A DNA stretch of 64,000 bases from Paraphysomonas bandaiensis (Eukaryota > Protista > Chrysophyceae): the NCBI GenBank assembly GCA_965644295.1, contig CBFFRP010000616.1:62001-126000 (forward strand). The letters run 5' to 3'. Both the position numbers and the translations under genes were made by a program. The notes below the pieces were generated by a model. It was not told the DNA's origin. It saw nothing but the letters and a program-made list of their open reading frames with translations, and searched no databases. Positions within the stretch are counted from its first letter, which is position 1. Each line of letters starts with the position of its first letter. Positions 15,105 to 62,400 of the stretch are shown piece after piece.

Positions 15105-15161
15105 AGTCGACAATAATATAAATAAACAATGTTTCTTTCTATCCGACTAAAGTATTAATAC

Positions 15162-16330: not shown

Positions 16331-16346
16331 ATAAACGACTTTCAAT

Positions 16347-26397: not shown

Positions 26398-26487
26398 ATG
26401 ATTTGGGGTATAAACCCTGCAAGAAAGTTGATGTTATATATATATATATTCACTGCATTGGGTGTATTATGTGGAAACGCTCTTGGC
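26398..26487 (+). other. Predicted signal peptide
   Basis: MIWGINPARKLMLYIYIFTALGVLCGNALG|DD: basic n-region, hydrophobic core and an A-x-G cleavage site. An alternative ATG lies at 26431. Confidence 0.7.
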
Positions 26488-38400: not shown

Positions 38401-41400
38401 GCTATCATCTGGTGCAGTTTCCGTGCGCACTGCTGATGGCTTTACAAACTCAGGAGATATTGCTCTTGGAACAGGCGATGCTAATGCTGCCGGTGATATC
38501 AGTGTTAGTTCTGGTGTATCTTTAAAATCTAATGGTGCGGGTGTACAAATTGCTGGTGGTGCATCGAGCATTGGTCAGGGTGGAATTGCAAATATTGTTG
38601 GGGGAGTTGGATCTGGTGCTGGTGGAGATACCTCTGTATCTGGTGGCTCTGGAATAATTTCAGGTGGATCAGTTACTATCAACAGTGGATCATCGGATAC
38701 ACTGAATTCTGGTAATGTTGTCATAAATACTGCTAGTGGAATGGGGTCAGGAAGTGTTGATATTTTTACTGGCGATTCCCTTTCCTCTGATGCTGGTGAG
38801 TTGTCCCTGAGATCAGGTTTTTCGAGTTCAGGCGCTGGAGGTAATATTGCATTGTCTGCGGGAAGTACTGATGGCGTCGTCGCTGGAGGATCCGTACTTT
38901 TGTCAGCCGGCAAAAGCGTAAGTACTGGCGGTGATGTCATTATTTCTGCGGGGTCCGGTTCGGTGACTAATGGGAAAGTTTTAATGCAATCTGGGTCTGG
39001 TCATGATAGCTTGCTAGTTTCGGATGACCTCATCTCTTTACAGACTGCGGGAACTGACAGTAGTATTACTCTTCGCATTCCAAGTCCTGTGGGTTCGTCA
39101 ACCGAGACTAAGAGCATGATTGCTTTTGGTTTCGATGACCAAATGAGTGGGGTGCCCAATTACGATTTTCGGTACCAGACGATTGATAATATAGATGGCA
39201 CGAGATCGAATGTCTTAATTGCTAACGCCCCTTTGCATGTCACAGAAGTTAAGTATTCGTCAGATAGGAGGATTAAACGAGATATTGAAGATGTAGATAG
39301 CGACGAACTTTTACAGAGACTTAACCGTGTGCGTGTGACAAGTTACAGATACAAAGAAGAATGGCTCCGCGTGCGTGACGTCAAGAACAGTCGTGTGCGT
39401 GGTGTCATTGCTCAAGAGCTTGCCGAAGTATTTCCCGAATATATTACAGTGGTACCCGATTTCAAGCTACCTGACAAGAATTTTACCCTCAAAAATTTTT
39501 ATCAAGTTGACAAAATGTCTTTAATGATGGATATGATAGCAGCAATTCAAGCTCAATCGAAACGATTTTCTATATCAGAACGATCATCTGACAGTACTGG
39601 AGATGTGAGGGTTAGCTCTAGTCCATGGAATTCCGTCATAGATGGAACAGATGATATGTCTTCTGGACGTGTTTTGATGACTTCTGGCGAGGCTTCTCTG
39701 GGCAAGTCTGGCAGTGTGTCGATAAGCAGTGGTCCTAGTGGTACTCAGGCGGGCAGTGTTCTATTAGTCCCTGGTACTAGTGGAAATGATGCAGGTGCGG
39801 ATGTTTCTATTCGCGGTGGTGATTCATTGTCAAGGGTATCTGTTGGCGGTGATGTGACGCTACGCAGTGGTGGTGGTGGGGCTGGGAGTGGAGATGTTTA
39901 TATCTCAACTGACGAAAGCGATCAGGGCACAGGGTCAATAGCACTGATTACTGGTGATAGCGGTGCAGATGCGGCTGGTTCCGTTTCTCTTTCTGCCGGT
40001 TCTGGTGCGTCTGAAATCGGAGCAGGAGTGTCTGTTCACGGTGGTGACTCATTATTGTCTACTGGTACAGGTGGGTTGTTATCACTTTCAGCTGGCAATG
40101 GTGCCTTGGGTGGAGATGTCAGTATCACTAGTGGGCATGGGACAGCAGGTTCAGGTGGTTCTATTGCTATAACCGGTGCTGATGGATCTATGTCTTACTC
40201 GGGCGGTTCTGTTTCTATTGAAGGGGGTTCATCTGGTCGTGATGGTTTGGGAGGTGATTTGCTAATTTCAGGTGGTGCTTCTTCGACTGGTGGATCTGGC
40301 ACCATCCGCGGTGGCTCGTCGGTTGCGGGTATTGGAGGGGGGTTAGTGCTTGAAGGCGGCGTGAGTGCAGTTGGAAGCAGTGGTCTTGTGTCTGTAGGGT
40401 CTGCTGGTTCACGTTCTCAAAGTGGCAGTGTTTATATTGCTACCGGTGTGTCTGAATCGTCATCAGGATCATTACACTTGTCCACTGGCGACTCGTCCGA
40501 TTCTTCTGGCGATATGGTTCTCAGCGTTGGGTCGTCGATTAGTCAAGATGGGGGTGATATCTCGGTTGTGTCTGGATCTGGAACTGAGGGTGGAGACGCG
40601 GTTGTTTCAGGAGGTGTTGGAACATCATCTGTCGGAGGTTCCGTATCTCTATTAGGCGGCGGCAGTACTTCTGTAGGAGGTCGAAGTGGTGATATTGAAG
40701 TAGCAACTGTTGAATCGAGAGGAAGCAGTGGTGACATTTCCATGAGTACTGGTGCAGGTGAGGCCAGGACTGGTTCTATTGCCATTTCTAGTGGACATAG
40801 CGAGCTTGGTGCAGGTGGTGACATATCTGTTCGAGGTGGGTCAGGTGCATCTGAAACTGGTTCACATATATCAGTTATTAGCGGAAGGACTACGTCTGCG
40901 ACTGGAACAGGTGGTTCATTGTCCTTGTCTGCTGGTGAAGGCGCTTATGGAGGTGATGTTGCAATTGCTAGTGGTAGTGGAGTATCTGGTTCCGGAGGTT
41001 CTGTTGCTATTAGAGGTGGCGATGGGTACCATTCATCTTCAGGGGGCTCTGTATCCGTAATAGGTGGTTCATCTGATCGTGATGGGTCTGGAGGTGATGT
41101 TCGAATTTTGTCGGGGTCTTCATTTGGAAGTGATGCTGCGAATGTGCATATTTCTTCTGGCTCAAGCGATGTAGGTTTTTCTGGGGCCGTCGGTGTTATG
41201 TCATCTGACAGTACGTTGGGAAGTGGTGTAGTCACTGTGAAATCTGGATCTTCGACGAGTGGTATGTCGGGGAATGCTATATTTATGTCTGGCAACTCAT
41301 TGGTGAGTTCAAGTGGTGATGCAGTGATTAGTACGGGTGCAGCCGTTTCCAGCAGTGGTAATATCCAATTAAGTGTTGGTGAGTCGGCTTCCTCTGCAGG

Positions 41401-44400
41401 AAATGTGTTGGTCTCTGCAGGAAAGGGTAGTATTGACCATGGTGGGTCTGTATTTGTTAGTAGCGGATTGACTCTTTCCCATTCGTCGCGAAGTGGCGCA
41501 GTAAATATTAAAAGTTCTGAAACGGCAGGAGAGAGTGGAAGCGTAGTTGTCTCAACTGGATTCGTGGAGACGGGTTCTTCAGGCGATATTACTGTAGCTA
41601 CTGGAAGTGGTTTGGCAGGTTCGGGGTCTATATCTCTGTCAAGTGGCGACGGAGAAGATCGTATCGGCGACGTTGTGGTAAGCTCGGGTGACTCCCTCAC
41701 CAGCAGTGGAGGGCGTGTTTTAATAGCAGGTGGAAAAGGTTTTAGTGGTGGTGACTTGTTGATTGAAGGTGGCACAGCAAAATCGACTACAGGAGGGTCT
41801 GTCGCAATATCTGCCGGTGAAGGATATGCTGCATCAAAGGGTGGTTCTGTTTCTATTGAAGGGGGTTCATCTGGTCGTGATGGTTTGGGGGGTGATTTGC
41901 TAATTTCAGGTGGTGCTTCTTCGACTGGTGGATCTGGCACCATCCGCGGTGGCTCGTCGGTTGCGGGTATTGGAGGGGGGTTAGTGCTTGAAGGCGGCGT
42001 GAGTGCAGTTGGAAGCAGTGGTCTTGTGTCTGTAGGGTCTGCTGGTTCACGTTCTCAAAGTGGCAGTGTTTATATTGCTACCGGTGTGTCTGAATCGTCA
42101 TCAGGATCATTACACTTGTCCACTGGCGACTCGTCCGATTCTTCTGGCGATATGGTTCTCAGCGTTGGGTCGTCGATTAGTCAAGATGGGGGTGATATCT
42201 CGGTTGTGTCTGGATCTGGAACTGAGGGTGGAGACGCGGTTGTTTCAGGAGGTGTTGGAACATCATCTGTCGGAGGTTCCGTATCTCTATTAGGCGGCGG
42301 CAGTACTTCAGTAGGAGGTCGAAGTGGTGATATTGAAGTAGCAACTGTTGAATCGAGAGGAAGCAGTGGTGACATTTCCATGAGTACTGGTGCAGGTGAG
42401 GCCAGGACTGGTTCTATTGCCATTTCTAGTGGACATAGCGAGCTTGGTGCAGGTGGTGACATATCTGTTCGAGGTGGGTCAGGTGCATCTGAAACTGGTT
42501 CACATATATCAGTTATTAGCGGAAGGACTACGTCTGCGACTGGAACAGGTGGTTCATTGTCCTTGTCTGCTGGTGAAGGCGCTTATGGAGGTGATGTTGC
42601 AATTGCTAGTGGTAGTGGAGTATCTGGTTCCGGAGGTTCTGTTGCTATTAGAGGTGGCGATGGGTACCATTCATCTTCAGGGGGCTCTGTATCCGTAATA
42701 GGTGGTTCATCTGATCGTGATGGGTCTGGAGGTAGAATTACTCTCCTTGGTGCCACTTCTTCCTTTGGAGGTTCCTCTATTATTAGTGGAGGGTCATATA
42801 TGGATGGAGTTGGGGGAGGTTCTATTGTAGAAGGAGGATCTAGTGGTGTTGGGATTTCAGGATCTGTGACAATCCGTTCTGTAGACTCTGTTAAAGAAAG
42901 TGGGCATATCTTTGTGACCACTGGTTCTTCTGAATTGTCATCAGGATCATTACACTTGTCCACTGGCGACTCGTCCGATTCTTCTGGCGATATGGTTCTC
43001 AGCGTTGGGTCGTCGATTAGTCAAGGTGGGGGTGATATCTCGGTTGTGTCTGGATCTGGAACTGAGGGTGGAGACGCGGTTGTTTCAGGAGGTGTTGGAA
43101 CATCATCTGTCGGAGGTTCCGTATCTCTATTAGGCGGCGGCAGTACTTCAGTAGGAGGTCGAAGTGGTGATATTGAAGTAGCAACTGTTGAATCGAGAGG
43201 AAGCAGTGGTGACATTTCCATGAGTACTGGTGCAGGTGAGGCCAGGACTGGTTCTATTGCCATTTCTAGTGGATATAGCGAGCTTGGTGCAGGTGGTGAC
43301 ATATCTGTTCGAGGTGGGTCAGGTGCATCTGAAACTGGTTCACATATATCAGTTATTAGCGGAAGGACTACGTCTGCGACTGGAACAGGTGGTTCATTGT
43401 CCTTGTCTGCTGGTGAAGGCGCTTATGGAGGTGATGTTGCAATTGCTAGTGGTAGTGGAGTATCTGGTTCCGGAGGTTCTGTTGCTATTAGAGGTGGCGA
43501 TGGGTACCGTTCATCTTCAGGGGGCTCTGTATCCGTAATAGGTGGTTCATCTGATCGTGATGGGTCTGGAGGTGATTTATTCCTTTCATCTGGATTCGGG
43601 ACATTCGGAAGTGTGCTTTCGGTTCAGTCTGGTCCATCTCTTTTTGATTCTGGTTCGTTGTCACTCTCCAGTGGTCGAAGTTCCGCTGGTAGAAGTGGTA
43701 TTGTTGCACTGGAGTCGGCTGACGGTCTTACTGGGAGTGGTGATGCGGTAGTGAAGTCTGCGTCGACTAGTTCTCAGGTGTCAGGAACTGTTTTGCTACG
43801 ATCAGGTGACAGTGCTGGTGTATCTGGTGACATACAGCTTCGAGTTGGTGATAGTGATTTTTCCTCTGGAGATGTACGTATATTTGGAGGACGCTCTGCC
43901 AAAGGTGGAGACATTTCAGTAATATCAGGTGACGCTCTTTCGAGCGACAGTGGGAACCTTGTAATAGCGTCGGGCACTTCAGTTTCAAGTTCAGGATCCA
44001 GTGGTGCAATTGCGATATCTACTGCCGGTGGAGGTCATAGCAGTGGTAACGTCGACCTAATTAGTGGTGACTCATTCCATGAAACCGGTCACATAGGACT
44101 ATACAGCGGAGTCAGTGAAAATGGTGTTGCTGGCACATTGTCCTTTCAAGGTGGATCAAGTGGAGGTGTTACTGGCGCGGATGTCTCTGTTCGAGGTGGT
44201 GACTCCTTGGCTGTTGACGGTTCTGGAGGAAGAGTATCTATCAGTGGGGGCTCAGGTGCTACTGGTGCTGATGTTCATTTGAGTAGTGGTGCTGGTACTA
44301 CTGGATCTGCGGGTTCTTTAATATTAGGGGTTGGTGAAGGATCAGGTATTTCTGCTGGAGGTGCAGTGATGATTGATGCTGGTTTGTCCACGGGGGGTGG

Positions 44401-47400
44401 AGATGGTGGTGCCATGTCGCTGCGAGGCGGTGCTGGTCATGTGGGTTCATCATCAGGGGGTGGTGTTTCGATAGAAGGTGGAGTATCTGGGTCAGGTACA
44501 GGTGGTTCGGTATCAGTATCGAGTGGTGCTAGTGCATCTGGATCTTCAGGTTCAGCTGTATTTGGTTCGCATTCTTCTACTATGTCTAGTGGGGATGTGA
44601 CTTTGTCTTCTGGCTTATCTAGTGAAGCTTCTGGTTCTGTTGTTGTGGCTTCGGGGTCTTCTGATGCTTCTGCTGGTGATGTAAGAATTTTTGTTGGAAA
44701 GAGTGGTCAGGCGAGTTTTGGAGGAGATGTTAGTATGACGTCTGGTTTTGGCACTCTGGGTGGAGGCAATGTTGGGATCAGTGGTGGAGAATCAACAGGA
44801 GGTGATGGTGGCTCGGTGTCTGTACAGAGTGGTCAGAGTTCATCCGGATCAAGTGGTGATATTGCGGTGGCTTCATCTGATGTTGCTGGCATTAGTGGGT
44901 CAGTGCAAATTGCGAGCGGGACTTCGAGATTCGACACTGGCAAGGTAGCGATTAGCAGCGGAGAGAGTGAAATGGGTACAGCTGGTAACGTGCTTCTTCA
45001 TGGTGGGTCAAGTGGAGATGTTACTGGCGCGGATGTTTCTGTTCGAGGTGGTGACTCCTTGGCTGTTGACGGTTCTGGAGGAAGAGTATCTATCAGTGGG
45101 GGCTCAGGTGCTACTGGTGCTGATGTTCATTTGAGTAGTGGTGCTGGTACTACTGGATCTGCGGGTTCTTTAATATTAGGGGTTGGTGAAGGATCAGGTA
45201 TTTCTGCTGGAGGTTCAGTGATGATTGATGCTGGTTTGTCCACGGGGGGTGGAGATGGTGGTGCCATGTCGCTGCGAGGCGGTGCTGGTCATGTGGGTTC
45301 ATCATCAGGGGGTAGTGTTTCGATAGAAGGTGGAGTATCTGGGTCAGGTACAGGTGGTTCGGTATCAGTATCGAGTGGTGCTAGTGCATCTGGGTCATCT
45401 GGTGCTGTTGTTTTATCGTCGTCGTCCTCAGTAAGTCGTAGTGGGTCTCTTTCTTTAGAGTCTGGAGATTCTTTTCTTGGTACCGCGGGGGACATTAATG
45501 TTGCTGTTGGACATAGCTCCCGTACTTCAGGCAAGTTGATGTTGTCTGGTGGTGCTGGTAGTGTAGGTGGTGACGTAGTTGTACATGCTGGCTCTGGTTT
45601 ATCTTCTCGAGGCGGTTCATTATATCTTCTAAGTGGTGCTACTTCAGCATCTGATAGCAGTGGGTCATTAACGATGGGATCAGAATCATCATCCGCCTCA
45701 GGGCCTGTATTATTGGGATCTGGTACATCAGCACTTCGCTCTGGCGAGTTGGAATTGAGAAGTGGTGACAGCGATTCTGCTAGTGCTGGTAGCGTACTTC
45801 TTCATGGTGGATCAAGTGGAGGTGTTACTGGCGCGGATGTTTCTGTTCGAGGTGGTGACTCCTTGGCTGTTGACGGTACTGGAGGAAGAGTATCTATCAG
45901 TGGGGGCTCAGGTGCTACTGGTGCTGATGTTCATTTGAGTAGTGGTGCTGGTACTACTGGATCTGCGGGTTCTTTAATATTAGGGGTTGGTGAAGGATCA
46001 GGTATTTCTGCTGGAGGTTCAGTGATGATTGATGCTGGTTTGTCCACGGGGGGTGGAGATGGTGGTGCCATGTCGCTGCGAGGCGGTGCTGGTCATGTGG
46101 GTTCATCATCAGGGGGTGGTGTTTCGATAGAAGGTGGAGTATCTGGGTCAGGTACAGGTGGTTCGGTATCAGTATCGAGTGGTGCTAGTGCATCTGGGTC
46201 ATCTGGTTCTTTGTTAGTTTCGTCTGGTCGTTCAATGTCTGAGAGTGGAAATGTTGTTCTGTCATCTGGGAAGTCTGATGATGGCACGGCTGGTGATATT
46301 TTAGTCTCAGTGGGAGAGAGCTTTCAACGTGCAGGCAAGTTGATGTTGTCTGGTGGTGCTGGTAGTGTAGGTGGTGACGTAGTTGTACATGCTGGCTCTG
46401 GTTCATCTTCTCGAGGCGGTTCATTATATCTTCTAAGTGGTGCTACTTCAGCATCTGATAGCAGTGGGTCATTAACGATGGGATCAGAATCATCATCCGC
46501 CTCAGGGCCTGTATTATTGGGATCTGGTACATCAGCACTTCGCTCTGGCGAGTTGGAATTGAGAAGTGGTGACAGCGATTCTGCTAGTGCTGGTAGCGTA
46601 CTTCTTCATGGTGGATCAAGTGGAGGTGTTACTGGCGCGGATGTTTCTGTTCGAGGTGGTGACTCCTTGGCTGTTGACGGTTCTGGAGGAAGAGTATCTA
46701 TCAGTGGGGGCTCAGGTGCTACTGGTGCTGATGTTCATTTGAGTAGTGGTGCTGGTACTACTGGATCTGCGGGTTCTTTAATATTAGGGGTTGGTGAAGG
46801 ATCAGGTATTTCTGCTGGAGGTTCAGTGATGATTGATGCTGGTTTGTCCACGGGGGGTGGAGATGGTGGTGCCATGTCGCTGCGAGGCGGTGCTGGTCAT
46901 GTGGGTTCATCATCAGGGGGTAGTGTTTCGATAGAAGGTGGAGTATCTGGGTCAGGTACAGGTGGTTCGGTATCAGTATCGAGTGGTGCTAGTGCATCTG
47001 GGTCTTCTGGTTCTTTGTCAGTTTCGTCTGCTGATAGCATTGTGTCTGGCTCTTTAACATTTAGATCTGGCGATTCTGTTGTTCAGTCGGGGAATGTTGT
47101 TTTTTCTGGTGGAAATTCTAAGGGTCCTTTTTCTACTGGTGGTGGTGTGATTTTTTCTGGTGGCTCTGGACATGCTGCTGGCTCTGTGGTTATTGATTCT
47201 GGAAATGGGATTAACAGTGCTGGTGATGTACGTTTGAGCAGTGGGCTTGTTGTTGCGAGCGACAGTGTCGGTGGAAATGTTTTGTTACATTCTCATGATG
47301 CTGTTGGTGTATCTGGAGCTGTCTCTATCTCAACAGGCTTCTCTCAAGTTGAATCCTCGGGGTCTATTGCGTTATCTAGTGGTTCATCAGAGCACGAGAT

Positions 47401-50400
47401 GGGTGGTGCGATATCACTTCTTGTTGGTAGTAGTGGGTCTACTTCTGCAGCTGAGATTTCACTACTGTCTGGAAGCACTACGAATGCTAACGGGAGAGGG
47501 GGAAGTGTGGATATAACCGCTGGTGATGGCTCGTTCGGCGGTGATGTGGTCATTGGTTCTGGTAATGGTTTCACCAGTAAATCCGGTGGTGCAATAGACA
47601 TCAGATCTGGTGGTGGAGGAGTGGTAGTGAGTAGCGGAGACGCGAGCGTGGATGGTTTGACTGGCGATATTGTGGTCAGCACGGGTTCTGGTACTGCCAC
47701 TGGATCTCTATCTTTGTCAACTGGGCATGGGTTTGGGACCGTTGCTGGTGGCATTGAACTAAGTGTTGGGTCCTCTGCAAGCGGTTCTGGATCTGATATA
47801 TTGTTATCTGCTGGAGATTCTGAGTCAAGTGGTGGCTCTGTATCAGTAGTTGGTGGAAGTAGTGCCACTGCGTCTGGTGGTGATGTTTTGGTGACTGCCG
47901 GTTCAGGTTCAGAATCTGGTCGGGCCGTGCTTCAGACTGCAACGGGTAGTGATAAGGTAACCTTGTCTGATGGTAGGGTGGATGTGCATTCTTCCGGTGG
48001 AATATCATTAAAAGTTCCGGTTTCATCTGATGCTACTTCCACGATGATTGCTTTTGGTTACGAAGACCCATCAACAGGGAATTCCAAGTATGATCTACGA
48101 TTACAGCAGTCGTCTGATTCAACTCGGTCAATCGTTGCTAGTGCTCCTCTCCAAGTGTCCAAGGTTGACTATCCGGCCGATAGTCGCATCAAACGTGATA
48201 TTGACACCGTGGATACAGATTCTCTTTTGCACCGTTTGAATCAGGTCAAGATTCAGAGCTACCGCTACACCAAGGACTGGTTAGAAGCCCGTGATGACAT
48301 AGAGGATATTCGTGTTCGTGGAGTCATTGCTGAGGATTTAGCGCAGGTGTTCCCTGAGCATGTTTCAGTCATCCCGGAATATAAGCTTGAGGATAGAGGT
48401 GTGAGTTTCAAGAATTTTCATCAAGTGGATAAAACATCGTTAATGATGGATATGATTGCTGCTATGCAATCTCAGTCCCGGCGATTTTCCACGACGCCAA
48501 ATTCGGATTCAGAGACTGGAGAGGTCAGAATGAGCTCCAGTTCCTGGTCGGAAGTACATGGTGGCACGGAGGATATGTCTTCTGGAAGTGTTTTGATGAC
48601 TTCTGGCGAGGCTTCTCTGGGCAAGTCTGGCAGTGTGTCGATAAACAGTGGACCTAGTGGTACTCAGGCGGGCAGTGTTCTATTAGTCCCTGGTACTAGT
48701 GGAAATGATGCAGGTGCGGATGTTTCTATTCGCGGTGGTGATTCATTGTCAAGGGTATCTGTTGGCGGTGATGTGACGCTACGCAGTGGTGGTGGTGGGG
48801 CTGGGAGTGGAGATGTTTATATCTCAACTGACGAAAGCGATCAGGGCACAGGGTCAATAGCACTGATTACTGGTGATAGCGGTGCAGATGCGGCTGGTTC
48901 CGTTTCTCTTTCTGCCGGTTCTGGTGCGTCTGAAATCGGAGCAGGAGTGTCTGTTCACGGTGGTGACTCATTATTGTCTACTGGTACAGGTGGGTTGTTA
49001 TCACTTTCAGCTGGCAATGGTGCCTTGGGTGGAGATGTCAGTATCACCAGTGGGCATGGGACAGCAGGTTCAGGTGGTTCTATTGCAATTTCTGGTGGGC
49101 ATGGAACCGCTGCTTCAAGAGGTGGGATAGCCGCAATTAAAGGTGGCAGTTCTTCCGCCTCTGAGGATGCCGGTGATGCAGCTCTCTTTGGTGGTTCAGC
49201 TAGTAGTAGTGGAAGAGGAGGGTCAACCCGAGTTAGTGGTGGCTCGTCATTTATGGGTAGCGGCGGCTCTTCTATAGTTGAAAGTGGGGAAAGTAGTGAG
49301 CATTCTAGTGGAAATACCATTGTTCGTACCGCTGATGCTGACATGTCCTCTGGATCTGTTTTGATTTCTTCGGGGAATAGTTTGGGTGGGAGTGTAGGAA
49401 GCATCATAGTTTCTGTCGGATCAGATTCCTCTTTTGGACATAGCGGAGGTGAAGTCTCTATTTATGCAGGCGACGGCTCTAGTGGTGGTGATGTTAATGT
49501 TAATGGCGGTGTTGGGGGCACTGGAGTTGGTGGATCTGTAGTGTTGACAAGCGGATCAGGAAATGGCAGTGGTGATATTTTGTTGTCGTCTAAGTCATCT
49601 TCCATGTTGTCTGGTTCTACCTCTCTCTATAGTGGTAGCTCAACTTCTTCCACTGGGACTGTTAGTCTACACTCAGGTGATTCATCTGCTGGTGATTCTG
49701 GAGATGTCGGTATTCGTTCTGGTTATAGTAGTGGTCTTAAGGGAGGTGATGTGTCAGTAACTTCTGGTAGTTCTAGTCTGACAGCGGGGGTGTTAAGATT
49801 GTCAGCTGGATCTGGTACAGTTGGAGGTGACGTTACGCTGTCAAGTGGAATAGGAATTGACGGGAAGTCTGGTGATATTTCCATTTTTTCCGCTGATGGA
49901 TCAGTTCAGGGACAGGCCGGCGGGGTCTATGTAAAGAGTGGTAATTCACTTTCTAGTTCTGGGGCAGGTATGTCGATTACTGGATCCTCATTGGATATTT
50001 CTGGTTCCTCTTTTATTCGAGATCGGGGTGGCGGTGTTAATTTGAAAAGTGGCGGGTCAAATACACTGAGCAGTGGTGCCGTTGATATTTCGACGCGGTC
50101 CCAAAGCGAGTCTACTGGTGATGTTTACCTTTCGACGGGGTCATCATCAGAATCTTCCTCTGGGAGCGTTAACATAGTGACAGGATATTCAGCTAAACGT
50201 TCGGGGGAAATCTCTCTCGCTGTTGGGACCAGTGAAACGATAGGGGGAGAATTAGAATTGCTTGCTGGACATGGAGAGAGTGGCGGCTCTGTTTCGATTA
50301 CAGCTGGGGACTCAAGTGTTGGTGTTGGAGGGAGTTTGAGTTTTCGCAGTGGAGCAGTAAGGGATAGCACATCTAGCTCCGGAAATGTTGACATTGCTAC

Positions 50401-53400: not shown

Positions 53401-56400
53401 TGAAGTTTCTGGTTCTGTTGTTGTGGCTTCGGGGTCTTCTGATGCTTCTGCTGGTGATGTAAGAATTTTTGTTGGAAAGAGTGGTCAGGCGAGTTTTGGA
53501 GGAGATGTTAGTATGACGTCTGGTTTTGGCACTCTGAGTGGAGGCAATGTTGGGATCAGTGGTGGAGAATCAACAGGAGGTGATGGTGGCTCGGTGTCTG
53601 TACAGAGTGGTCAGAGTTCATCCGGATCAAGTGGTGATATTGCGGTGGCTTCATCTGATGTTGCTGGCATTAGTGGGTCAGTGCAAATTGCGAGCGGGAC
53701 TTCGAGATTCGACACTGGCAAGGTAGCGATTAGCAGCGGAGAGAGTGAAATGGGTACAGCTGGTAACGTGCTTCTTCATGGTGGGTCAAGTGGAGATGTT
53801 ACTGGCGCGGATGTTTCTGTTCGAGGTGGTGACTCCTTGGCTGTTGACGGTTCTGGAGGAAGAGTATCTATCAGTGGGGGCTCAGGTGCTACTGGTGCTG
53901 ATGTTCATTTGAGTAGTGGTGCTGGTACTACTGGATCTGCGGGTTCTTTAATATTAGGGGTTGGTGAAGGATCAGGTATTTCTGCTGGAGGTTCAGTGAT
54001 GATTGATGCTGGTTTGTCCACGGGGGGTGGAGATGGTGGTGCCATGTCGCTGCGAGGCGGTGCTGGTCATGTGGGTTCATCATCAGGGGGTAGTGTTTCG
54101 ATAGAAGGTGGAGTATCTGGGTCAGGTACAGGTGGTTCGGTATCAGTATCGAGTGGTGCTAGTGCATCTGGGTCATCTGGTTCTTTGTTAGTTTCGTCTG
54201 GTCGTTCAATGTCTGAGACTGGTAATGTTGTCTTGTCATCTGGGAACTCTGCTAGTAGAGCAGGCGATGTGTTGGTCTCAGTGGGAGAGAGCTTTCAACG
54301 TGCAGGCAAGTTGATGTTGTCTGGTGGTGCTGGTAGTGTAGGTGGTGACGTAGTTGTACATGCTGGCTCTGGTTCATCTTCTCGAGGCGGTTCATTATAT
54401 CTTCTAAGTGGTGCTACTTCAGCATCTGATAGCAGTGGGTCATTAACGATGGGATCAGAATCATCATCCGCCTCAGGGCCTGTATTATTGGGATCTGGTA
54501 CATCAGCACTTCGCTCTGGCGAGTTGGAATTGAGAAGTGGTGACAGCGATTCTGCTAGTGCTGGTAGCGTACTTCTTCATGGTGGATCAAGTGGAGGTGT
54601 TACTGGCGCGGATGTTTCTGTTCGAGGCGGTGACTCCTTGGCTGTTGACGGTTCTGGAGGAAGAGTATCTATCAGTGGGGGCTCAGGTGCTACTGGTGCT
54701 GATGTTCATTTGAGTAGTGGTGCTGGTACTACTGGATCTGCGGGTTCTTTAATATTAGGGGTTGGTGAAGGATCAGGTATTTCTGCTGGAGGTTCAGTGA
54801 TGATTGATGCTGGTTTGTCCACGGGGGGTGGAGATGGTGGTGCCATGTCGCTGCGAGGCGGTGCTGGTCATGTGGGTTCATCATCAGGGGGTAGTGTTTC
54901 GATAGAAGGTGGAGTATCTGGGTCAGGTACAGGTGGTTCGGTATCAGTATCGAGTGGTGCTAGTGCATCTGGGTCATCTGGTTCTTTGTTAGTTTCGTCT
55001 GGTAGGTCGGTGCTTGAATCAGGTATTGTTGGTGTTGGCAGCGGTGGTTCTTTGGATGGCAGTTCAGGTATTTTGTTATTATCCACCGGTAGCTCTGATC
55101 ATGCCTCTGGGGGTGATATATTTTTGACTGGTGGTAGTGGGTCGTTGTCTGGCGGTTCGTTGCTTTCATCAGCAGGAAGTGGTCTCTCTGGTGGGTCTAT
55201 TTCTCTAAGTTCTGGTAGCAGTGTTCATGAGAGTGGGGGGCATGTTGATATTCTCTCCGGTCAATCGTCTTCTCATTCATCAGGCAGGGTGTTATTGTCC
55301 TCCTCTGCTGGTAGTAATTCTGGATCTCTTGAATTATCTACTGGATTCGCACAACTTCAATCAGGTGATATAGGAATTATCACTGGTGATAGCGAATCAT
55401 CTGGATCTATTGAGATTTTGACTGGTTCTAGTTCAATGTCAGATGGTTCTTCGGTTGCAATTATATCAGGTCAATCGCTATCAACTTCTGGAAAAAGTGG
55501 TGATGTTAATGTTAGAGCGAATAGTGGTTTTACTGGTGGAAATGTTGCCGTGTTGAGTGGCGCTGGAAGTGGCGGTAGCGGTGGTGCAGTAAATATTCGC
55601 GCTGGAGAAGGAGAATATTTTGGTGGTTCTCTTGTCGCTGCATCTGGTGATTCCTCTCATGGGAATGGGGGGTCGTTGGCACTATTTGCAGGAAATTCAA
55701 ATGAAAATGGTGGCCATGCAACTGTGGAAGCTGGGAATGCCGTTTCGTCAACAGGTGGTAGGGTTGCTCTTTCAAGTGGTGAGAGTGCTGAACAGACCAG
55801 TGGTTCTACAGCATTGTCAACTGGGAAAGGTCACTTGAATTCTGGGACTGTTAGTGTTATTTCTGGTGACTCCATAGTTGGTAGCTCTGGTGCAGTGGTG
55901 CTGGCTTCAGGTCAGAGTGAAGAAGGCTCGACAGGTGACATTTTACTGTCGACATCGTTTAGTCGAGGTACTGCATCCAAGGGCGGGAACATAGTGGTGG
56001 TAGCTGGCTCTGCTGATGTAGGTGGGGAGATATCACTATCTGGTGGTTTATCAAAAGTCGGAACGGGTGGAACTGTTGAAATTAATGCTGGTGCAAGTGA
56101 GAATTCTGCTTCGCGTGGTGGTCACGTTCACCTTGGGACTAGCGGTGGCGTTGGCTCAACTGGTAATTTGTTGATGTCGACTGGAGAGTCAAGTATGTCT
56201 TCCGGTGCATTACACCTTCGTAGTGGAAATTCAGAATTATCAGCAGGTGGGGTTGAAATTCTTGCAGGAACCTCCGCTGATACTGCGGGTGCTGACGTTT
56301 TATTTCGTGGTGGTGATTCGAAGGGTTTAACTGGAGGAGCTGTATTAGTTAGTGGTGGTGCAGGTTCGACTGGCGGTAACGTGTTGGTTACCGCTGGTAA

Positions 56401-59400
56401 CGGTGCTGTGAATTCAGGCGGTGTGGTTGATATTCTTGGTGGCGATGGTTCTGGTTTTGATGGTGGTTCTATTTCGTTGAGTAGTGGAGCATCAGATTCA
56501 GCTGGTGCCGGATCTCTTCGATTTTCTAGCGGCTCAGGAATGGAATCATCGGGGACTGTACATCTTATGTCAGGTTTAACTCGTCGGGGTACTACTGGTT
56601 CTGTGTATATTACCACCTCTGAAGGAAATGGAGCAGCTACCGGAGAAGTAAGTTTGCTGAGTGGAAGTTCAGATATGTCTACTGGAGATGTTACTATCAA
56701 AACTGGTGATTCCGGTAATGAAGCTGGTGAAATTGCACTATACGCCGGAGCATCTGATAATTCACGGGGCGGAGACGTTTCCCTCTACTCGGGTACTGGG
56801 GCCACTGGCGGTGACATAGCGCTATCTGCAGGATCAGGGGCGAAGAATACCGGTGGTTCACTCTCCATGCTTTCGGGAAGTGCGCTTGATGTATATTCTA
56901 TGGGCGGGCATGTTGTCATGGGCTCACCAAATTCACCTGGTTTTTCTGGGAATTTGGACTTAAGCACAGGCCGTTCTGAGTCCAGTTCAACAGGAGGTGT
57001 ACGAATTACAACAGGCGCTAGTGTTACAGCAAATTCTGGGGATATATCCTTCCGTGTTGGACAGTCCTCATCTCCTAGTGGTTCGTTTGTTGATATTCGT
57101 GCTGGAGATTCGACTAGTTCTGGTGGGGTTGGCGGGAGAGTCACTGTGGATGGTGGAAGTGGATCGTCTGGTGGTGGCCTTTACTTTAGTGGTGGTATTG
57201 GATCTAATGGTGTTGGAGGAGATGCTGTGTTTGTCGCTGGTGAAGGTCGTGGCAGTGGTGGCTCTTCTGTGCTGAAGGGAGGTTCATCTATTACAGCTAG
57301 TGGTGGCGCAGTAGATATATCTGGTGGTGATAGTATGCTAAGTGGGGGAAGTATTCTTATTACGAGTGGCGCGAGTGCACGGGGTAGTGGTTCGGCTATT
57401 ATATCTACTGCCGCGACTGATTTACAGTCTGGAGATGTTGTTGTTGAGTCTGGTATGACTGGTAGTGGAATAAGTGGGGGCATCGTGTTGTCGACAGGAT
57501 CTTCAACTGATAGTAGCACTGGTGGCATTTCTCTAGTTCCAGGCGATGCGTCTCAACATGGTACAGGAGGAGGAGTCGATGTGAGTGCTGGTTACGGTGC
57601 TGTGGGTGGAGACGTAAACGTGCGTGGCGGGAACAGTATTAGTGGAAATGGCGGATCCTTCACGGTATATACTGGAACATCTAGCGTAAATTCATCTGGT
57701 GTACTTACAATGTCATCGGCTTCAGCAGTCGGTGACTCGGGGAAAGCTATTTTCTCAACTGGAGAATCAGATAGCAGCACAGGTGGATTGATATTGTCAA
57801 CAGGAAACAGCGCTACCTCAACTGCAGGGGAGTTCAAAATTCGTGGTGGATCAAGTGGAGGTGTTACTGGCGCGGATGTTTCTGTTCGAGGTGGTGACTC
57901 CTTGGCTGTTGACGGTTCTGGAGGAAGAGTATCTATCAGTGGGGGCTCAGGTGCTACTGGTGCTGATGTTCATTTGAGTAGTGGTGCTGGTACTACTGGA
58001 TCTGCGGGTTCTTTAATATTAGGGGTTGGTGAAGGATCAGGTATTTCTGCTGGAGGTTCAGTGATGATTGATGCTGGTTTGTCCACGGGGGGTGGAGATG
58101 GTGGTGCCATGTCGCTGCGAGGCGGTGCTGGTCATGTGGGTTCATCATCAGGGGGTGGTGTTTCGATAGAAGGTGGAGTATCTGGGTCAGGTACAGGTGG
58201 TTCGGTATCAGTATCGAGTGGTGCTAGTGCATCTGGGTCATCTGGTTCTTTGTTAGTTTCGTCTGGTCGTTCAATGTCTGAGACTGGTAATGTTGTCTTG
58301 TCATCTGGGAACTCTGCTAGTAGAGCAGGCGATGTGTTGGTCTCAGTGGGAGAGAGCTTTCAACGTGCAGGCAAGTTGATGTTGTCTGGTGGTGCTGGTA
58401 GTGTAGGTGGTGACGTAGTTGTACATGCTGGCTCTGGTTCATCTTCTCGAGGCGGTTCATTATATCTTCTAAGTGGTGCTACTTCAGCATCTGATAGCAG
58501 TGGGTCATTAACGATGGGATCAGAATCATCATCCGCCTCAGGGCCTGTATTATTGGGATCTGGTACATCAGCACTTCGCTCTGGCGAGTTGGAATTGAGA
58601 AGTGGTGACAGCGATTCTGCTAGTGCTGGTAGCGTACTTCTTCATGGTGGATCAAGTGGAGGTGTTACTGGCGCGGATGTTTCTGTTCGAGGCGGTGACT
58701 CCTTGGCTGTTGACGGTTCTGGAGGAAGAGTATCTATCAGTGGGGGCTCAGGTGCTACTGGTGCTGATGTTCATTTGAGTAGTGGTGCTGGTACTACTGG
58801 ATCTGCGGGTTCTTTAATATTAGGGGTTGGTGAAGGATCAGGTATTTCTGCTGGAGGTTCAGTGATGATTGATGCTGGTTTGTCCACGGGGGGTGGAGAT
58901 GGTGGTGCCATGTCGCTGCGAGGCGGTGCTGGTCATGTGGGTTCATCATCAGGGGGTGGTGTTTCGATAGAAGGTGGAGTATCTAGGTCAGGTACAGGTG
59001 GTTCGGTATCAGTATCGAGTGGTGCTAGTGCATCTGGGTCATCTGGTTCTTTGCTAGTTTCCTCTGCATCGTCTGGTTATTCTAGTGGTACGGTAGTTGT
59101 TTCTTCTGGTGATTCGTTTTTGGAAAATGCTGGCGATGTTGTTTTAAGTAGTGGTCGTTCTGGCCGTAGTGCAGTTTCTGGAGGGTCAGTTAGTCTAAGT
59201 AACGATGTCAGCGTAAAAGCCGGTGGCAGTGGTGATATATTGTTTTCCGGCGGGCGAGGGTATAGTGATTTACCTGGTGGTTCAATTAAGCTGCTATCTG
59301 GTGTTTCCTCTTATCGTAGTGGTGATGTTTTAATTAGTTCTGGAGCCAGCGATGAAGAATCTGGGTCTGTTGTTGTAACCAGTATGGACAGTGCAGGAGG

Positions 59401-62400
59401 TACAGCTGGAGCCGTTGAGATTCGTCCTGGGAGTTCCTCTTTTGATGGCGCGGGTATTGCGCTCAGCGGTGGGATTGTTGACGGCGCAGAGGGAAAAGGA
59501 GGAGCTGCGTTCATATCTGGTGGTGATGGTCCTCAGGGTGGTGATGTAGTAATTAGAAGTGGTGTGGGGCTTGTACCTTCATCTGGCCGAATTGATATAA
59601 GTGCTTCAGTTGGTGGAGATATTGGTATTTCTGGTGGCGCAGCGAGTGTCGGTGCAGGTGGTGGAGTGTCTATATCTGGTGGCTCTGCTGACGAATCTGC
59701 TGATGGTGGGTCTGTAGTACTCTTAGGTGGACAGTCTTCTATCGGCAGTGGAGGTGATGTTGCTATATCAAGTGGCTCTGGCATAGAGAGCGTTAGTGGT
59801 TCTGTCAACATTGGTTCGAGTGATGGATATGTGCGTAGTGGTTCAGTGGCACTAGTTAGTGGGTCTTCTCGGGATGGTGCTTCTGGCTCTATTGACGTCA
59901 GATCTGGTGATTCTGATTTCGGTTCTGGTAGTGTATCACTGCTGAGTGGTAATAGCATCTCCGGCATTGGGGGCAATGTAGTTGTGTCGGCTGGAAGTGG
60001 AGTTATTGGTGGAAGCGTACTATTTTCTGCCGGTTCTGGTGAGTCAAATGAAGGAGGAAGCTTGGTTTTCAAGAGTGGAACCTCAGATAAAGCTGAAAGT
60101 GGTGCTCTTGTATTTGCGACTGCTAATTCTGATGGTGTGAGTGGTCTGGGTTCTATAAAGACTGGAAGTAGTAGTACAGAAAGTGGTCCACTTCAGATAG
60201 GTACAGGTGTAAGTACTGCTGGCAGTGCAGGTTCGGTTGGTGTTTTTGTAGGTATCTCTGACACCGAGGGAGGTGCACTCTCACTGGAAAGTGGCGAATC
60301 CGTACGATCATACGGTGGTCGTGCTCTTCTTTCTGGTGGAAGTGGGATGTCAGGAGGTAATGTTATCGTGAGAAGCGGGAATGGAAGAGATGGATCTAAT
60401 GGATCAGTGGGTATATCAGCTGGGCCGTCATCTTCTGGTGGCATGGTCACATTGTCTGGAGGATCACGAGCAGATGCCGGTGACATTGTTATTGTTGGTG
60501 GATCGGGTGCTGATATCATTAATGGTGGTTCTATTAGTTTGACGGGCGGTCAGTCCGATGGAGGTAAAGGAGGATCAGTTCGCGTCTCTAGTGGACACTC
60601 AGCTACTTCAATGTCGAGTGATGTTTTAGTGACGTCTGGTGCTTCTTCTGTTCAATCTGGATCTATCAAAATGTCATCTAACAGCGTCATCGGAGATTCC
60701 GGAACCATATCATTGACTTCTGGAGACTCTGAAGAGACCGGCGCAGGTAATATTGAAATAGCTGTCGGGACTTCTAAACAAACTGGTGGAAAGGTACTTG
60801 TGTCATCTGGCCAGGGTTATAGTGGTGGTAACCTACATTTAAGTGGTGGGGTTGGAACCAATACCGTAGGAGGATCGCTGTCCTTCAGCAGTGGTGTTAG
60901 TCAATCTCTGTCTTCAGCAAGTGGAGACGTAGAGCTGTCTACTTCTGACAGTGTCGGTGCATCTGGAATCATGCAAATATACACTGGGACGTCATCTGGT
61001 GAGACCGGGTCGATTAATATTGCTAGTGGGAGTTCTTCTGATGCCCCAGCTGGTGGTATTTTCATCAAAGGTGGTAGTGGTGCACAATCGGGATCAGATG
61101 TAGTTCTTCATGCAGGCAGTGCATCGTCGGATGAAAGCAAAGGTGGTGGAGTGGATATAACCGCTGGTGATGGCTCGTTCGGCGGTGATGTGGTCATTGG
61201 TTCTGGTAATGGTTTCACCAGTAAATCCGGTGGTGCAATAGACATCAGATCTGGTGGTGGAGGAGTGGTAGTGAGTAGCGGAGACGCGAGCGTGGATGGT
61301 TTGACTGGCGATATTGTGGTCAGCACGGGTTCTGGTACTGCCACTGGATCTCTATCTTTGTCAACTGGGCATGGGTTTGGGACCGTTGCTGGTGGCATTG
61401 AACTAAGTGTTGGGTCCTCTGCAAGCGGTTCTGGATCGGATATATTGTTATCTGCTGGAGATTCTGAGTCAAGTGGTGGCTCTGTATCAGTAGTTGGTGG
61501 AAGTAGTGCCACTGCGTCTGGTGGTGATGTTTTGGTGACTGCCGGTTCAGGTTCAGAATCTGGTCGGGCCGTGCTTCAGACTGCAACGGGTAGTGATAAG
61601 GTAACCTTGTCTGATGGTAGGGTGGATGTGCATTCTTCCGGTGGAATATCATTAAAAGTTCCGGTTTCATCTGATGCTACTTCCACGATGATTGCTTTTG
61701 GTTACGAAGACCCATCAACAGGGAATTCCAAGTATGATCTACGATTACAGCAGTCGTCTGATTCAACTCGGTCAATCGTTGCTAGTGCTCCTCTCCAAGT
61801 GTCCAAGGTTGACTATCCGGCCGATAGTCGCATCAAACGTGATATTGACACCGTGGATACAGATTCTCTTTTGCACCGTTTGAATCAGGTCAAGATTCAG
61901 AGCTACCGCTACACCAAGGACTGGTTAGAAGCCCGTGATGACATAGAGGATATTCGTGTTCGTGGAGTCATTGCTGAGGATTTAGCGCAGGTGTTCCCTG
62001 AGCATGTTTCAGTCATCCCGGAATATAAGCTTGAGGATAGAGGTGTGAGTTTCAAGAATTTTCATCAAGTGGATAAAACATCGTTAATGATGGATATGAT
62101 TGCTGCTATGCAATCTCAGTCCCGGCGATTTTCCACGACGCCAAATTCGGATTCAGAGACTGGAGAGGTCAGAATGAGCTCCAGTTCCTGGTCGGAAGTA
62201 CATGGTGGCACGGAGGATATGTCTTCTGGAAGTGTTTTGATGACTTCTGGCGAGGCTTCTCTGGGCAAGTCTGGCAGTGTGTCGATAAACAGTGGACCTA
62301 GTGGTACTCAGGCGGGCAGTGTTCTATTAGCCCCTGGTACTAGTGGAAATGATGCAGGTGCGGATGTTTCTATTCGCGGTGGTGATTCATTGTCAAGGGT

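What the first reader, a model, noticed from the sequence alone, without database searches (positions are those of the whole stretch)
39260..62131. One cleaving and two catalytically dead chaperones: natural Ser->Ala at the autocleavage site
Seen: domain 1 has S-D-R-R-I-K (Ser about residue 4224). Domains 2 and 3 have A-D-S-R-I-K (about residues 7196 and 11744), and GVIAQE becomes GVIAED, while the rest of the motif set is conserved. Established: this Ser-Lys dyad performs the self-cleavage (endoNF Ser911/Lys916), and Ser->Ala is the standard mutation that blocks cleavage while allowing folding. Inference: the polyprotein is cut once, releasing a ~4,200-aa PSI-tipped fibre. The downstream chaperones stay in place as permanent trimerisation knots that let a much longer fibre fold piecewise. 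The active/dead pattern would act as a programmable processing code.
Basis: partly seen in the sequence, partly recalled or inferred. Interest (0 to 1): 0.88.

Follow-up and report, generated by a model that had tools for sequence, protein, structure and literature searches.

The report
Giant fibre gene with disabled self-cutting domains
A stramenopile alga-type microbe carries a single gene of more than 34,600 codons for a secreted three-stranded fibre. Copies of a phage/MYRF-type self-cutting folding domain sit inside the chain, and three of them have lost the cutting serine but otherwise look intact, so they probably fold the fibre without cutting it.

Summary
SDRRIK lies at window 39260 and ADSRIK at 48176 and 61820, each inside a Pfam Peptidase_S74 (ICA) domain. 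The Ala aligns with the nucleophile Ser587 of MyRF (Ser911 of endoNF).

The window shows only part of the gene. The stop-free frame runs from 26948 to the contig end (34,637 aa) and holds five internal ICAs in the order S-A-A-A-S. A 12-kb contig (C641) probably supplies the 3' end, with a classical terminal Ser-type ICA. So "cut once" is wrong.

The Ala copies are near-identical recent duplicates (99.6-99.8% DNA identity), which makes one Ser-to-Ala event, not two.

The Ala-type domain looks functional as a fold:
- dN is 0.27-0.33 against saturated dS.
- The AF2 model has pLDDT 91 and its best PDB match is the MyRF ICA.
- It keeps 17 of 19 family-conserved columns, departing only at the nucleophile and at Gln64->Glu (MyRF Q639).

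Ser loss is recurrent in this protist ICA family: 22 of 78 domains lack Ser, which needs at least 4 independent changes. It flips between orthologous ICAs of related genomes, so a fixed "processing code" is not supported.

There is no expression or cleavage evidence. The scan had already noted the same gene on the adjacent DNA. The closest published kind is the giant ICA-terminated protist glycofibril (TLP-12 preprint).

The parts
26398..26537 (+). Exon 1: start codon and signal-peptide-like hydrophobic N-terminus (MIWGINPARKLMLYIYIFTALGVLCGNALG/DD), followed by a GT intron
   Evidence: Read by eye. No signal-peptide predictor was available, so this is inference.
26584..26730 (+). Exon 2: first PSI (plexin repeat) domain
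   Evidence: Pfam PF01437 at 17.6 bits (below the 23.1 cut-off), with the Cys pattern present. GT-AG borders are visible.
26781..26942 (+). Exon 3: second PSI domain
   Evidence: Pfam PF01437 at 26.3 bits, above the cut-off.
26948..64000 (+). Stop-free frame of the giant Ser/Gly-rich fibre. Exon 4 starts at about 26994. The frame runs on to the contig end (34,637 aa in all).
   Evidence: Composition is 24% Ser and 24% Gly, with Gly periodicity of 7/8/15 residues.
39224..39610 (+). ICA/Peptidase_S74 domain 1, Ser type (SDRRIK at 39260-39277, GVIAQE at 39401-39418). This is the predicted self-cleavage site, before Ser at 39260.
   Evidence: It keeps 19/19 family-conserved columns.
48140..48529 (+). 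ICA domain 2, Ala type (ADSRIK at 48176-48193, GVIAED at 48320-48337). Predicted not to cleave.
   Evidence: AF2 model pLDDT 91.2, best PDB match MyRF ICA.
61784..62173 (+). ICA domain 3, Ala type (ADSRIK at 61820-61837, GVIAED at 61964-61981). It is identical to domain 2.
47507..49036 (+). Recently duplicated block carrying the Ala-type ICA (copy 1). Copy 2 is 61151-62680. Copy 3 lies 8.4 kb beyond the window (Ala codon at extended coordinate 72434).
   Evidence: 99.6-99.8% identity with 5-6 mismatches and different flanks.
61151..62680 (+). Recently duplicated block carrying the Ala-type ICA (copy 2)
39734..40128 (+). 'Restart' of the fibre just after ICA 1. It is 395 nt exactly identical to 48653-49047 after ICA 2, although the two ICA cores are only 50-77% identical in DNA.
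   Evidence: Interpreted as gene conversion or duplication of the fibre repeats that stopped short of the ICA cores (inference).

Best explanation
The window holds the first third of one enormous gene of an ochrophyte stramenopile. It encodes a signal peptide, two PSI domains, and then a Ser/Gly-rich repeat shaft with 7/8/15-residue periodicity. I infer the shaft to be a trimeric beta-helical, probably heavily O-glycosylated, extracellular fibril. Five ICA (Peptidase_S74) domains of the MyRF/tailspike type lie inside the chain at frame residues 4105, 7077, 11625, 15163 and 25355, in the order Ser, Ala, Ala, Ala, Ser. A sixth, classical C-terminal Ser-type ICA probably lies on contig C641. Each ICA acts as a trimerisation and registration nucleus for the shaft segment upstream of it, so the chain can fold segment by segment as it enters the secretory pathway, rather than waiting for a single C-terminal chaperone. 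The Ser-type ICAs then cut the chain at their own Ser through the Ser-Lys dyad. This releases a PSI-headed fibre of about 4,200 aa, a middle piece of 21,250 aa, and a distal piece. The Ala-type ICAs have lost the nucleophile, and also Gln64 (MyRF Q639), but keep everything else. They fold, trimerise and stay in the chain as permanent nodes. Shown here: the sequences, the homology, the alignment of Ala to the nucleophile, the retained fold, the purifying selection, and the recurrence of Ser loss in the family. Inferred: trimer formation, cleavage at the Ser types, non-cleavage at the Ala types, secretion, and expression.
For: Five PF13884 hits lie in one 34,637-aa stop-free frame. The Ala aligns to MyRF S587 / Pfam profile position 1. 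S587A and K592A abolish MyRF cleavage, and S587 equals endoNF S911 (PMC8326128). The AF2 model of the Ala-type domain has pLDDT 91.2. Its top PDB matches are MyRF ICA 7dc3 (TM 0.73, rmsd 2.1 A), then endoNF 3gw6, T5 pb1 4uw8 and phi29 gp12 3gud. Between domains 1, 2 and 5, dS is saturated while dN is 0.27-0.33, and the Ala branch (0.157) is not much longer than the Ser branches (0.175, 0.113). Of 19 columns that are at least 90% conserved in 54 database Ser-type ICAs, domains 1 and 5 keep 19 and domain 2 keeps 17, departing only at S13A and Q64E. Family-wide, 22 of 78 full ICAs lack Ser. Those also lose Lys18 (10/22 kept vs 56/56), Ala63, Gln64, Arg51 and Lys97, while keeping fold positions such as W47, P71, F92 and D103. 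That is the pattern expected when catalysis is lost and the fold is retained. Relatives carry tandem ICAs with Ser first and then Ala, Asp or Ser. The PSI exons and a signal-like N-terminus are present. Giant (about 20,000 aa) ICA-terminated trimeric beta-helix glycofibrils exist in protists (preprint 10.1101/2025.09.30.679562).
Against: No cleavage, trimerisation or expression data exist. No identical transcript-derived protein was found, although this organism's HSP90 has a 100% MMETSP match. The Ala type still has Lys18, Arg16, Tyr41 and Tyr43, and has gained a Ser two residues downstream (ADS), so an alternative nucleophile cannot be excluded from sequence alone. The three Ala copies are one recent duplication, and the contig ends inside a tandem repeat, so copy numbers may be misassembled. 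The association between Ser loss and active-site decay rests on only about 4 well-supported independent contrasts. It is never in the opposite direction for Lys18, Ala63 or Gln64 (occasionally for Arg51 and Lys97), but it is not significant. The nearest database relatives of domain 2 are all Ser type, so the age of the Ala cannot be fixed.
Confidence: 0.55

Rival explanations
1. The Ala-type ICAs still cut the chain, using another nucleophile (for example the Ser at +2 in ADSRIK paired with the retained Lys) or a shifted site. Every ICA would then be a processing site.
For: Lys18, Arg16, Tyr41 and Tyr43 are retained in domain 2. Ser at +2 is commoner in Ser-less ICAs (9/22) than in Ser-type ones (5/56). 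MyRF mutants can cleave at alternative nearby sites (PMC8326128).
Against: S587A alone abolishes MyRF cleavage. Three of the nine Ser-less ICAs with Ser at +2 have also lost the Lys (P0017, P0018, P0020), so Ser+2 is not tied to a dyad. Asp, Glu, Val and Gly also occur at the nucleophile position. Gln64, which helps hold the scissile strand in MyRF, is replaced in domain 2.
Confidence: 0.08
2. Internal ICAs are trimerisation and registration nodes only, and none of them cuts in vivo. Internal position, glycosylation or the downstream shaft would prevent cleavage or release. The Ser/Ala difference would then be nearly neutral.
For: The nucleophile state flips between orthologous internal ICAs of related genomes by single-base changes. 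Ser loss is frequent, with 4-11 changes on the tree. The Ala type is the sister of a Ser type within the same gene.
Against: All 56 Ser-type ICAs keep Lys18, Ala63 and Gln/Asn64 without exception, whereas Ser-less ones lose them. This argues that catalysis is selected wherever Ser is present. The first ICA is Ser in all three related loci and is the best conserved (89% vs 77-81%). MyRF's ICA is also internal and does cleave.
Confidence: 0.14
3. The Ala-type copies are decaying relics, or an artefact of a repeat-rich assembly, in a gene or gene region that is not expressed as annotated. The pattern would then have no function.
For: The contig ends inside a tandem repeat. The Ala copies are near-identical. 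No transcript-derived protein matching the ICA regions was found. Reads could not be consulted.
Against: A 104-kb frame without a single stop, whose ICA cores are diverged to saturation at synonymous sites but have dN of only about 0.3, cannot be unselected. The Ala copies differ by 5-6 bases and sit in different flanks. Domain 2 keeps 17/19 conserved columns and gives a confident ICA fold. Relatives in other assemblies and metagenomes show the same architecture.
Confidence: 0.1
4. The uncleaved ICAs serve mainly as hinges, branch points or docking knobs along the fibril, rather than as folding aids.
For: They are globular interruptions of about 130 aa in an otherwise uniform shaft, spaced 3,000-10,000 aa apart.
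Against: Nothing tested here discriminates this from the folding-node reading, and the two are compatible. No additional binding domains were found by Pfam.
Confidence: 0.1

Closest known systems
MyRF/MrfA ICA domain (mouse MyRF, PDB 7dc3; Dictyostelium MrfA)
   Same: It is the best sequence and structure match (E 2e-12 for domain 1, 5e-8 for domain 2; TM 0.73). It is an internal rather than C-terminal ICA in a eukaryotic protein. It has the Ser-Lys dyad with the YxY and GVIAQE motifs and a short C-terminal coiled coil. The engineered S587A form is the exact counterpart of the natural Ala type here.
   Different: MyRF has one ICA, between an Ndt80-type DNA-binding domain and a membrane anchor. 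Here there is no such domain (Pfam), the ICAs are repeated five or six times within a fibre shaft, and the Ser-to-Ala change is natural.
Phage tailspike/tail-fibre C-terminal intramolecular chaperone domains (K1F endoNF 3gw6, phi29 gp12 3gud, T5 pb1 4uw8); Pfam PF13884, MEROPS S74
   Same: The fold and Pfam family are the same. The domain follows a trimeric beta-helical shaft that it helps to fold, then cuts itself off at its first Ser (mechanism from PMC8326128 and established literature).
   Different: The phage domains are single, C-terminal and discarded. Here most are internal, the downstream chain continues as more fibre, and three copies lack the Ser.
TLP-12-type glycofibril proteins (candidates such as the 19,853-aa Amoebophrya protein with a C-terminal ICA; bioRxiv 10.1101/2025.09.30.679562)
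   Same: It is a giant protist protein made of short Gly/Ser-containing repeats. The cryo-EM structure shows a trimeric triple beta-helix coated with O-glycans on Ser, and an ICA is proposed to drive trimer folding.
   Different: That protein is from alveolates, with a dodecapeptide repeat and one terminal ICA. This one is from a stramenopile, with 7/8/15-residue periodicity, a PSI head, multiple internal ICAs and nucleophile-less copies. No direct sequence comparison was made here because no reference for that protein was available.
Paralogues in the same genome with one C-terminal ICA (contigs C427, C297, C664; about 4,770-aa frames)
   Same: They have the same kind of shaft, and all have Ser-type ICAs (D/PSDRRLK ... 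G[VL]IAQ[DE]) about 90-110 aa before the stop.
   Different: They have a single terminal ICA of a different subfamily. Earlier notes of this scan give them a mastigoneme-type EGF head, which I did not test.

Membership tests
Peptidase_S74 / ICA domain (Pfam PF13884) | Profile match above the curated cut-off (22 bits) | tested here: met
   Scores are 54.3 bits (domain 1) and 39.8 bits (domains 2 and 3). There are five hits in the frame at 43.8-58.1 bits.
Peptidase_S74 / ICA domain (Pfam PF13884) | ICA fold (beta 'cutter' ring plus C-terminal helix) | tested here: met
   AF2 model of the Ala-type domain has pLDDT 91.2. Foldseek top hits are 7dc3, 3gw6, 4uw8 and 3gud, all with probability 1.00. 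The model is a monomer, so the trimer was not modelled.
Active S74 autopeptidase (Ser-Lys dyad) | Nucleophile Ser at the first residue of the domain (endoNF S911 / MyRF S587) | tested here: not met
   This row refers to domains 2, 3 and 4, which have Ala (codon GCC). The feature is met for domains 1 (TCA) and 5 (TCT) and for the probable terminal ICA on C641.
Active S74 autopeptidase (Ser-Lys dyad) | General-base Lys five residues after the Ser (K916 / K592) | tested here: met
   Lys is present in all five internal ICAs (xDxRIK).
Active S74 autopeptidase (Ser-Lys dyad) | Cleavage-site-holding residues (MyRF R590, Y615, Y617, Q639) | tested here: inconclusive
   Arg16, Tyr41 and Tyr43 are kept in all domains. 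Gln64 is kept in domains 1 and 5 but is Glu in domains 2-4. No Ser-type relative has Glu there (0/54).
Active S74 autopeptidase (Ser-Lys dyad) | Demonstrated self-cleavage dependent on trimerisation | not testable with these tools
   This needs expression and mass spectrometry.
MYRF family of membrane-bound transcription factors | Ndt80-type DNA-binding domain upstream of the ICA and a transmembrane anchor downstream | tested here: not met
   Pfam finds only PSI and Peptidase_S74 in the 12,351 aa of the window's frame. The flanks of each ICA are Ser/Gly repeats.
Giant ICA-assisted trimeric glycofibrils (TLP-12 type) | Very long short-period Gly/Ser repeat shaft plus an ICA; trimeric triple beta-helix with O-glycans | tested here: inconclusive
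   The shaft is 24% Ser and 24% Gly with period 7/8/15, and the ICAs are present. Trimer, beta-helix and glycans are inferred only. The repeat length differs from the dodecapeptide of TLP-12.

The most novel reading that the evidence does not exclude
In protist giant fibrils the ICA has split into two natural classes: a cutter and a non-cutting trimerisation node. A single-base toggle at the nucleophile codon (TCN/GCN/GAT) is then an evolvable switch that sets how many pieces, and of what length, one polyprotein yields. The same fibre gene could thus deliver fibrils from about 0.2 to more than 1 micrometre long (a rough inference from triple-beta-helix rise per residue) without changing the shaft.
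Probability: 0.3. Interest if true: 0.8.

Novelty: new variant of a known kind. Interest (0 to 1): 0.62.

Why it matters
The ICA domain is a textbook case of a chaperone that removes itself. Its two activities, folding a trimer and cutting, have been separated only by engineered Ser->Ala mutants. Here nature appears to have made that separation repeatedly, inside what may be one of the longest protein-coding frames known (over 34,600 codons, probably about 37,000). If the Ala-type domains fold but do not cut, three things follow. They show how a 100-kb coding sequence can fold piecewise. They give ready-made non-cleaving trimerisation modules for protein engineering. And they provide a genetic handle on the poorly understood giant glycofibrils of protists. 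The Ser-type versus Ser-less comparison also picks out, from evolution alone, the positions tied to catalysis (Lys18, Ala63, Gln64, Arg51, Lys97 in my numbering). These can be checked against the MyRF and endoNF mutagenesis.

Tried and rejected
**Steps that gave nothing**
There is no read-level check of the Ala codon or copy number, and no RNA evidence.
- The search for homologous proteins on the domain-2 region, whole and restricted to the ICA core, found only 4 distant hits each. Neither found a 100% MMETSP fragment, so expression stays open.
- The tree-based independent-pairs test of 'Ser loss goes with loss of Lys18/Gln64/Ala63/Arg51/Lys97' had only 4 supported contrasts and cannot reach significance. 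I therefore report the raw Fisher values as descriptive only.
- Literature searches for internal or naturally inactive ICAs and for the three related assemblies found nothing specific. The organisms of GCA_024449685.1, GCA_024449835.1 and GCA_024449875.1 were not established.

**Readings rejected**
- That ADSRIK is an ancient shared subtype: the tree puts the window's Ala type next to its own Ser-type domain 5.
- That the three Ala copies are a simple assembly duplication: they have different flanks and 5-6 mismatches.
- MYRF membership: there is no DNA-binding domain.
- That the antisense ORFs inside the gene (for example 40945-41943) are genes: they lie within a repeat with strong strand composition skew.

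**Limits**

Full report
**1. What is in the sequence**

The + strand of the window has one stop-free frame from 26948 to the window's end, 12,351 codons. The window is G000:C616:62001-126000 of a 62.5-Mb, 669-contig genome. In the whole contig the frame stays open for 34,637 codons and runs off the contig end.

- SDRRIK at 39260 and GVIAQE at 39401.
- ADSRIK at 48176 and 61820, with GVIAED at 48320 and 61964.

Each motif opens a Pfam Peptidase_S74 match above the curated cut-off. The Ser copy matches from profile position 1 and the Ala copies from position 2.

**2. The window shows only part of the pattern**

The whole frame has exactly five ICA domains:

| Frame residue | Motif | Position |
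|---|---|---|
| 4105 | SDRRIK | window 39260 |
| 7077 | ADSRIK | window 48176 |
| 11625 | ADSRIK | window 61820 |
| 15163 | ADSRIK | 8.4 kb beyond the window |
| 25355 | SDERIK | 39 kb beyond the window |

The order is therefore S-A-A-A-S, followed by at least 9,283 further residues.

The contig ends inside a 91-aa tandem repeat. A 12.3-kb contig, C641, read on its reverse strand, opens with the same repeat (92-96% DNA identity). It continues through a different repeat and ends with a classical C-terminal Ser-type ICA (VPSDRRLK ... GVIAQE, coiled coil, stop). I take C641 to be the probable 3' end of the same gene, which would then have about 37,000 codons and six ICAs. This link is an inference, because the join lies in unassembled repeat.

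**3. The Ala copies are one event**

The blocks carrying the Ala-type ICA are 99.6-99.8% identical over 1.5-2.7 kb. They differ by 5-6 bases, sit in different flanks, and have identical ICA cores. They are recent duplicates or conversion products, so there was one Ser-to-Ala change, not two or three.

By contrast, the cores of domains 1, 2 and 5 are old:
- Synonymous sites are saturated (66-74 synonymous differences), while dN is 0.27-0.33.
- The inferred non-synonymous branch lengths are 0.175 (domain 1), 0.157 (domain 2) and 0.113 (domain 5), calculated from the pairwise values.
- The Ala type has therefore evolved under purifying selection at about the same rate as the Ser types.

Oddly, the 395 nt just after ICA 1 and ICA 2 are exactly identical (39734-40128 = 48653-49047), although the ICA cores themselves are only 50-77% identical. 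Homogenisation of the shaft repeats stopped at the ICA borders.

**4. Homology and the catalytic site**

The best solved relative is the MyRF ICA, 7dc3 (E 2e-12 for domain 1, 5e-8 for domain 2). The alignment puts S/A-D-x-R-I-K on 'ADLRAK' of that chain. The paper reports expressing MyRF as the S587A mutant to obtain uncleaved protein, which fits the Ala in that chain.

The same paper (PMC8326128) reports that:
- MyRF is cut between P586 and S587.
- S587A and K592A abolish cleavage, and S587/K592 equal endoNF S911/K916.
- Y615A plus Y617A together block cleavage.
- R590A and Q639A cause partial or misplaced cleavage.

In my numbering (Ser = position 13) these residues are R16, K18, Y41, Y43 and Q64.

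An AlphaFold2 model of the Ala-type domain with its neck (68-sequence alignment) has mean pLDDT 91.2. Its best PDB matches are MyRF ICA (TM 0.73, rmsd 2.1 A over 115 columns), then endoNF, T5 pb1 and phi29 gp12 ICAs. The fold is intact.

**5. The family context**

An exhaustive HMMER search with the Ala-type domain found 378 relatives. Most are fragments from metagenomes and fragmented eukaryotic assemblies, and none is more than about 59% identical.

Of 78 full-length ICA cores (75 from those hits, plus this gene's domains 1, 2 and 5):
- 56 have Ser at the nucleophile position.
- 22 do not: 17 Ala, 2 Asp, and 1 each of Glu, Val and Gly.

The Ser-type domains keep Lys18 (56/56), Ala63 (56/56), Gln/Asn64 (56/56), Arg51 (48/56) and Lys97 (51/56). 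The Ser-less ones keep them in only 10/22, 12/22, 14/22, 6/21 and 9/22. Fold positions (W47, R59, P71, F92, D103) stay conserved in both groups.

This is the signature of lost catalysis with a retained fold. However, the counts are not phylogenetically independent. Only about four well-supported independent contrasts exist. The direction is never reversed for Lys18, Ala63 or Gln64 (occasionally for Arg51 and Lys97), and significance cannot be reached.

The window's Ala type is an early-stage member of the Ser-less class. Of 19 columns that are at least 90% conserved in 54 database Ser-type ICAs, it departs at exactly two, S13A and Q64E. Neither substitution is seen in any Ser-type domain. Domains 1 and 5 keep all 19.

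**6. Recurrence and lability**

On a maximum-likelihood tree of the 78 cores, the window's Ala type is sister to this gene's own Ser-type domain 5 (SH-aLRT 96). Ser loss needs at least 4 and up to 11 changes.

Three NCBI assemblies carry a related, shorter gene (about 5,000 codons) with three ICAs in tandem. They are GCA_024449685.1, GCA_024449835.1 and GCA_024449875.1. They are eukaryotic, with HSP70 and TTL neighbours, but I could not establish their organisms. The ICA orders are S-A-D, S-S-A, and S-A for the part recovered.

Between the first two assemblies:
- ICA1 is Ser in both (TCA/TCA, 89% identical).
- ICA2 is GCA (Ala) versus TCA (Ser), 77% identical.
- ICA3 is GAT (Asp) versus GCT (Ala), 81% identical.

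So 'Ser first, then variable' holds, but the states of the later ICAs flip by single-base changes. This argues against a fixed code. It is compatible either with tunable processing or with near-neutrality of cleavage at those sites.

**7. The gene and the organism**

Upstream of the frame there are three small exons with GT-AG borders:
- A Met plus a signal-peptide-like segment (26398-26537).
- Two PSI repeats (26584-26730 at 17.6 bits; 26781-26942 at 26.3 bits, above the cut-off).

The shaft is 24% Ser and 24% Gly with Gly periodicity of 7, 8 and 15. I read this as a trimeric beta-helical shaft, by analogy only.

The genome's cytosolic HSP90 is 100% identical to an MMETSP transcript. It is 85-87% identical to those of Paraphysomonas imperforata, Ectocarpus and Ochromonas danica. 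The organism is therefore an ochrophyte stramenopile.

Other fibre genes in the genome have a single terminal Ser-type ICA.

**8. Mechanism proposed**

Each ICA trimerises and sets the register of the shaft segment upstream of it. A chain of about 37,000 residues would take hours to synthesise, and this would let it fold segment by segment.

Ser-type ICAs then cut at their own Ser. This would give:
- A PSI-headed piece of about 4,200 aa.
- A 21,250-aa middle piece that begins with ICA 1 and contains the three uncleaved Ala-type nodes.
- A distal piece of at least 9,283 aa.
- A small terminal ICA, if C641 belongs to the gene.

The Ala-type ICAs remain as covalent nodes. The steps shown and the steps inferred are listed under the best explanation. 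The rivals are an alternative nucleophile, no cleavage anywhere, relic or artefact, and hinge or docking function. They are weighed in their own sections.

**9. Comparison with what is known**

The domain is a member of Peptidase_S74/ICA. The protein is not a MYRF, because it has no DNA-binding domain.

The nearest published kind of molecule is the giant trimeric glycofibril TLP-12. Its candidate proteins, of about 20,000 aa from Amoebophrya, end in one ICA (preprint 10.1101/2025.09.30.679562).

What appears new is the multiplicity and internal position of the ICAs and the natural, recurrent loss of the nucleophile. I found no paper on either. From memory, MEROPS lists non-peptidase homologues for most families, so Ser-less S74 sequences as such are probably recorded there without study.

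The scan had already flagged the same gene on the adjoining DNA (s1-443492, s1-436726, s1-443456).

**10. Limits**

- Copy numbers in this repeat-rich gene may be wrong.
- Cleavage and trimerisation are inferred from homology.

Noticed in passing
G000 contig C641 (loci L011 + L019, reverse strand), whole 12,294 bases: An open frame of 2,466 codons runs in from the contig edge. It begins with the same 91-aa tandem repeat that ends contig C616, then changes to a 'GLTVxGAGLKVAxGGGDVTGG' repeat. It finishes with a classical C-terminal Ser-type ICA and a stop. This is probably the missing 3' end of the giant gene.
   Followed up: partly
window 39734-40128 and 48653-49047: 395 nt are exactly identical immediately downstream of ICA 1 and ICA 2, although the ICA cores are only 50-77% identical. 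Gene conversion of the fibre 'restart' appears to stop at the ICA borders.
   Followed up: partly
window 10496-10883 and 15162-15549: A perfect 388-nt direct repeat, about 4.7 kb apart, lies in the gene-poor AT-richer region upstream of the giant gene. It could be the long terminal repeats of a retroelement or a recent duplication.
   Followed up: no
L013 (GCA_024449685.1, JAANST010975565.1) 5215-18413 and L014 (GCA_024449835.1, JAANTA010268468.1) 2496-18195: Related fibre genes of about 5,000 codons carry three ICAs only about 380 aa apart in mid-gene (S-A-D and S-S-A). They were split into several 'genes' by prokaryote-style gene calling. The HSP70 neighbour seen beside the L014 locus also lies beside the locus that carries P0002 in GCA_024449875.1.
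   Followed up: partly
protein P0004 (RYG63291.1): A 415-aa 'tail fiber domain-containing protein [archaeon]' from a MAG is 55% identical to this gene's ICA region. It looks like a eukaryotic (protist) fragment binned into an archaeal MAG.
   Followed up: no
extended coordinates about 120,000-130,858 (C616:182,000-192,858; loci L006, L007): The last several kb of the contig are a nearly perfect tandem array of a 273-nt (91-aa) unit. This is presumably why the assembly breaks here.
   Followed up: partly
window 27067-27117: An AT-rich stretch with GT...AG ends is read through in frame as 'SAVLNILLSLYLQCIL'. It looks like a small stop-free intron inside the start of the big frame.
   Followed up: no
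window 40945-41943 (- strand) and 52138-52749 (- strand): Long antisense ORFs (332 and 203 aa) lie inside the giant gene. They are most likely by-products of the repeat's skewed composition, not genes.
   Followed up: no
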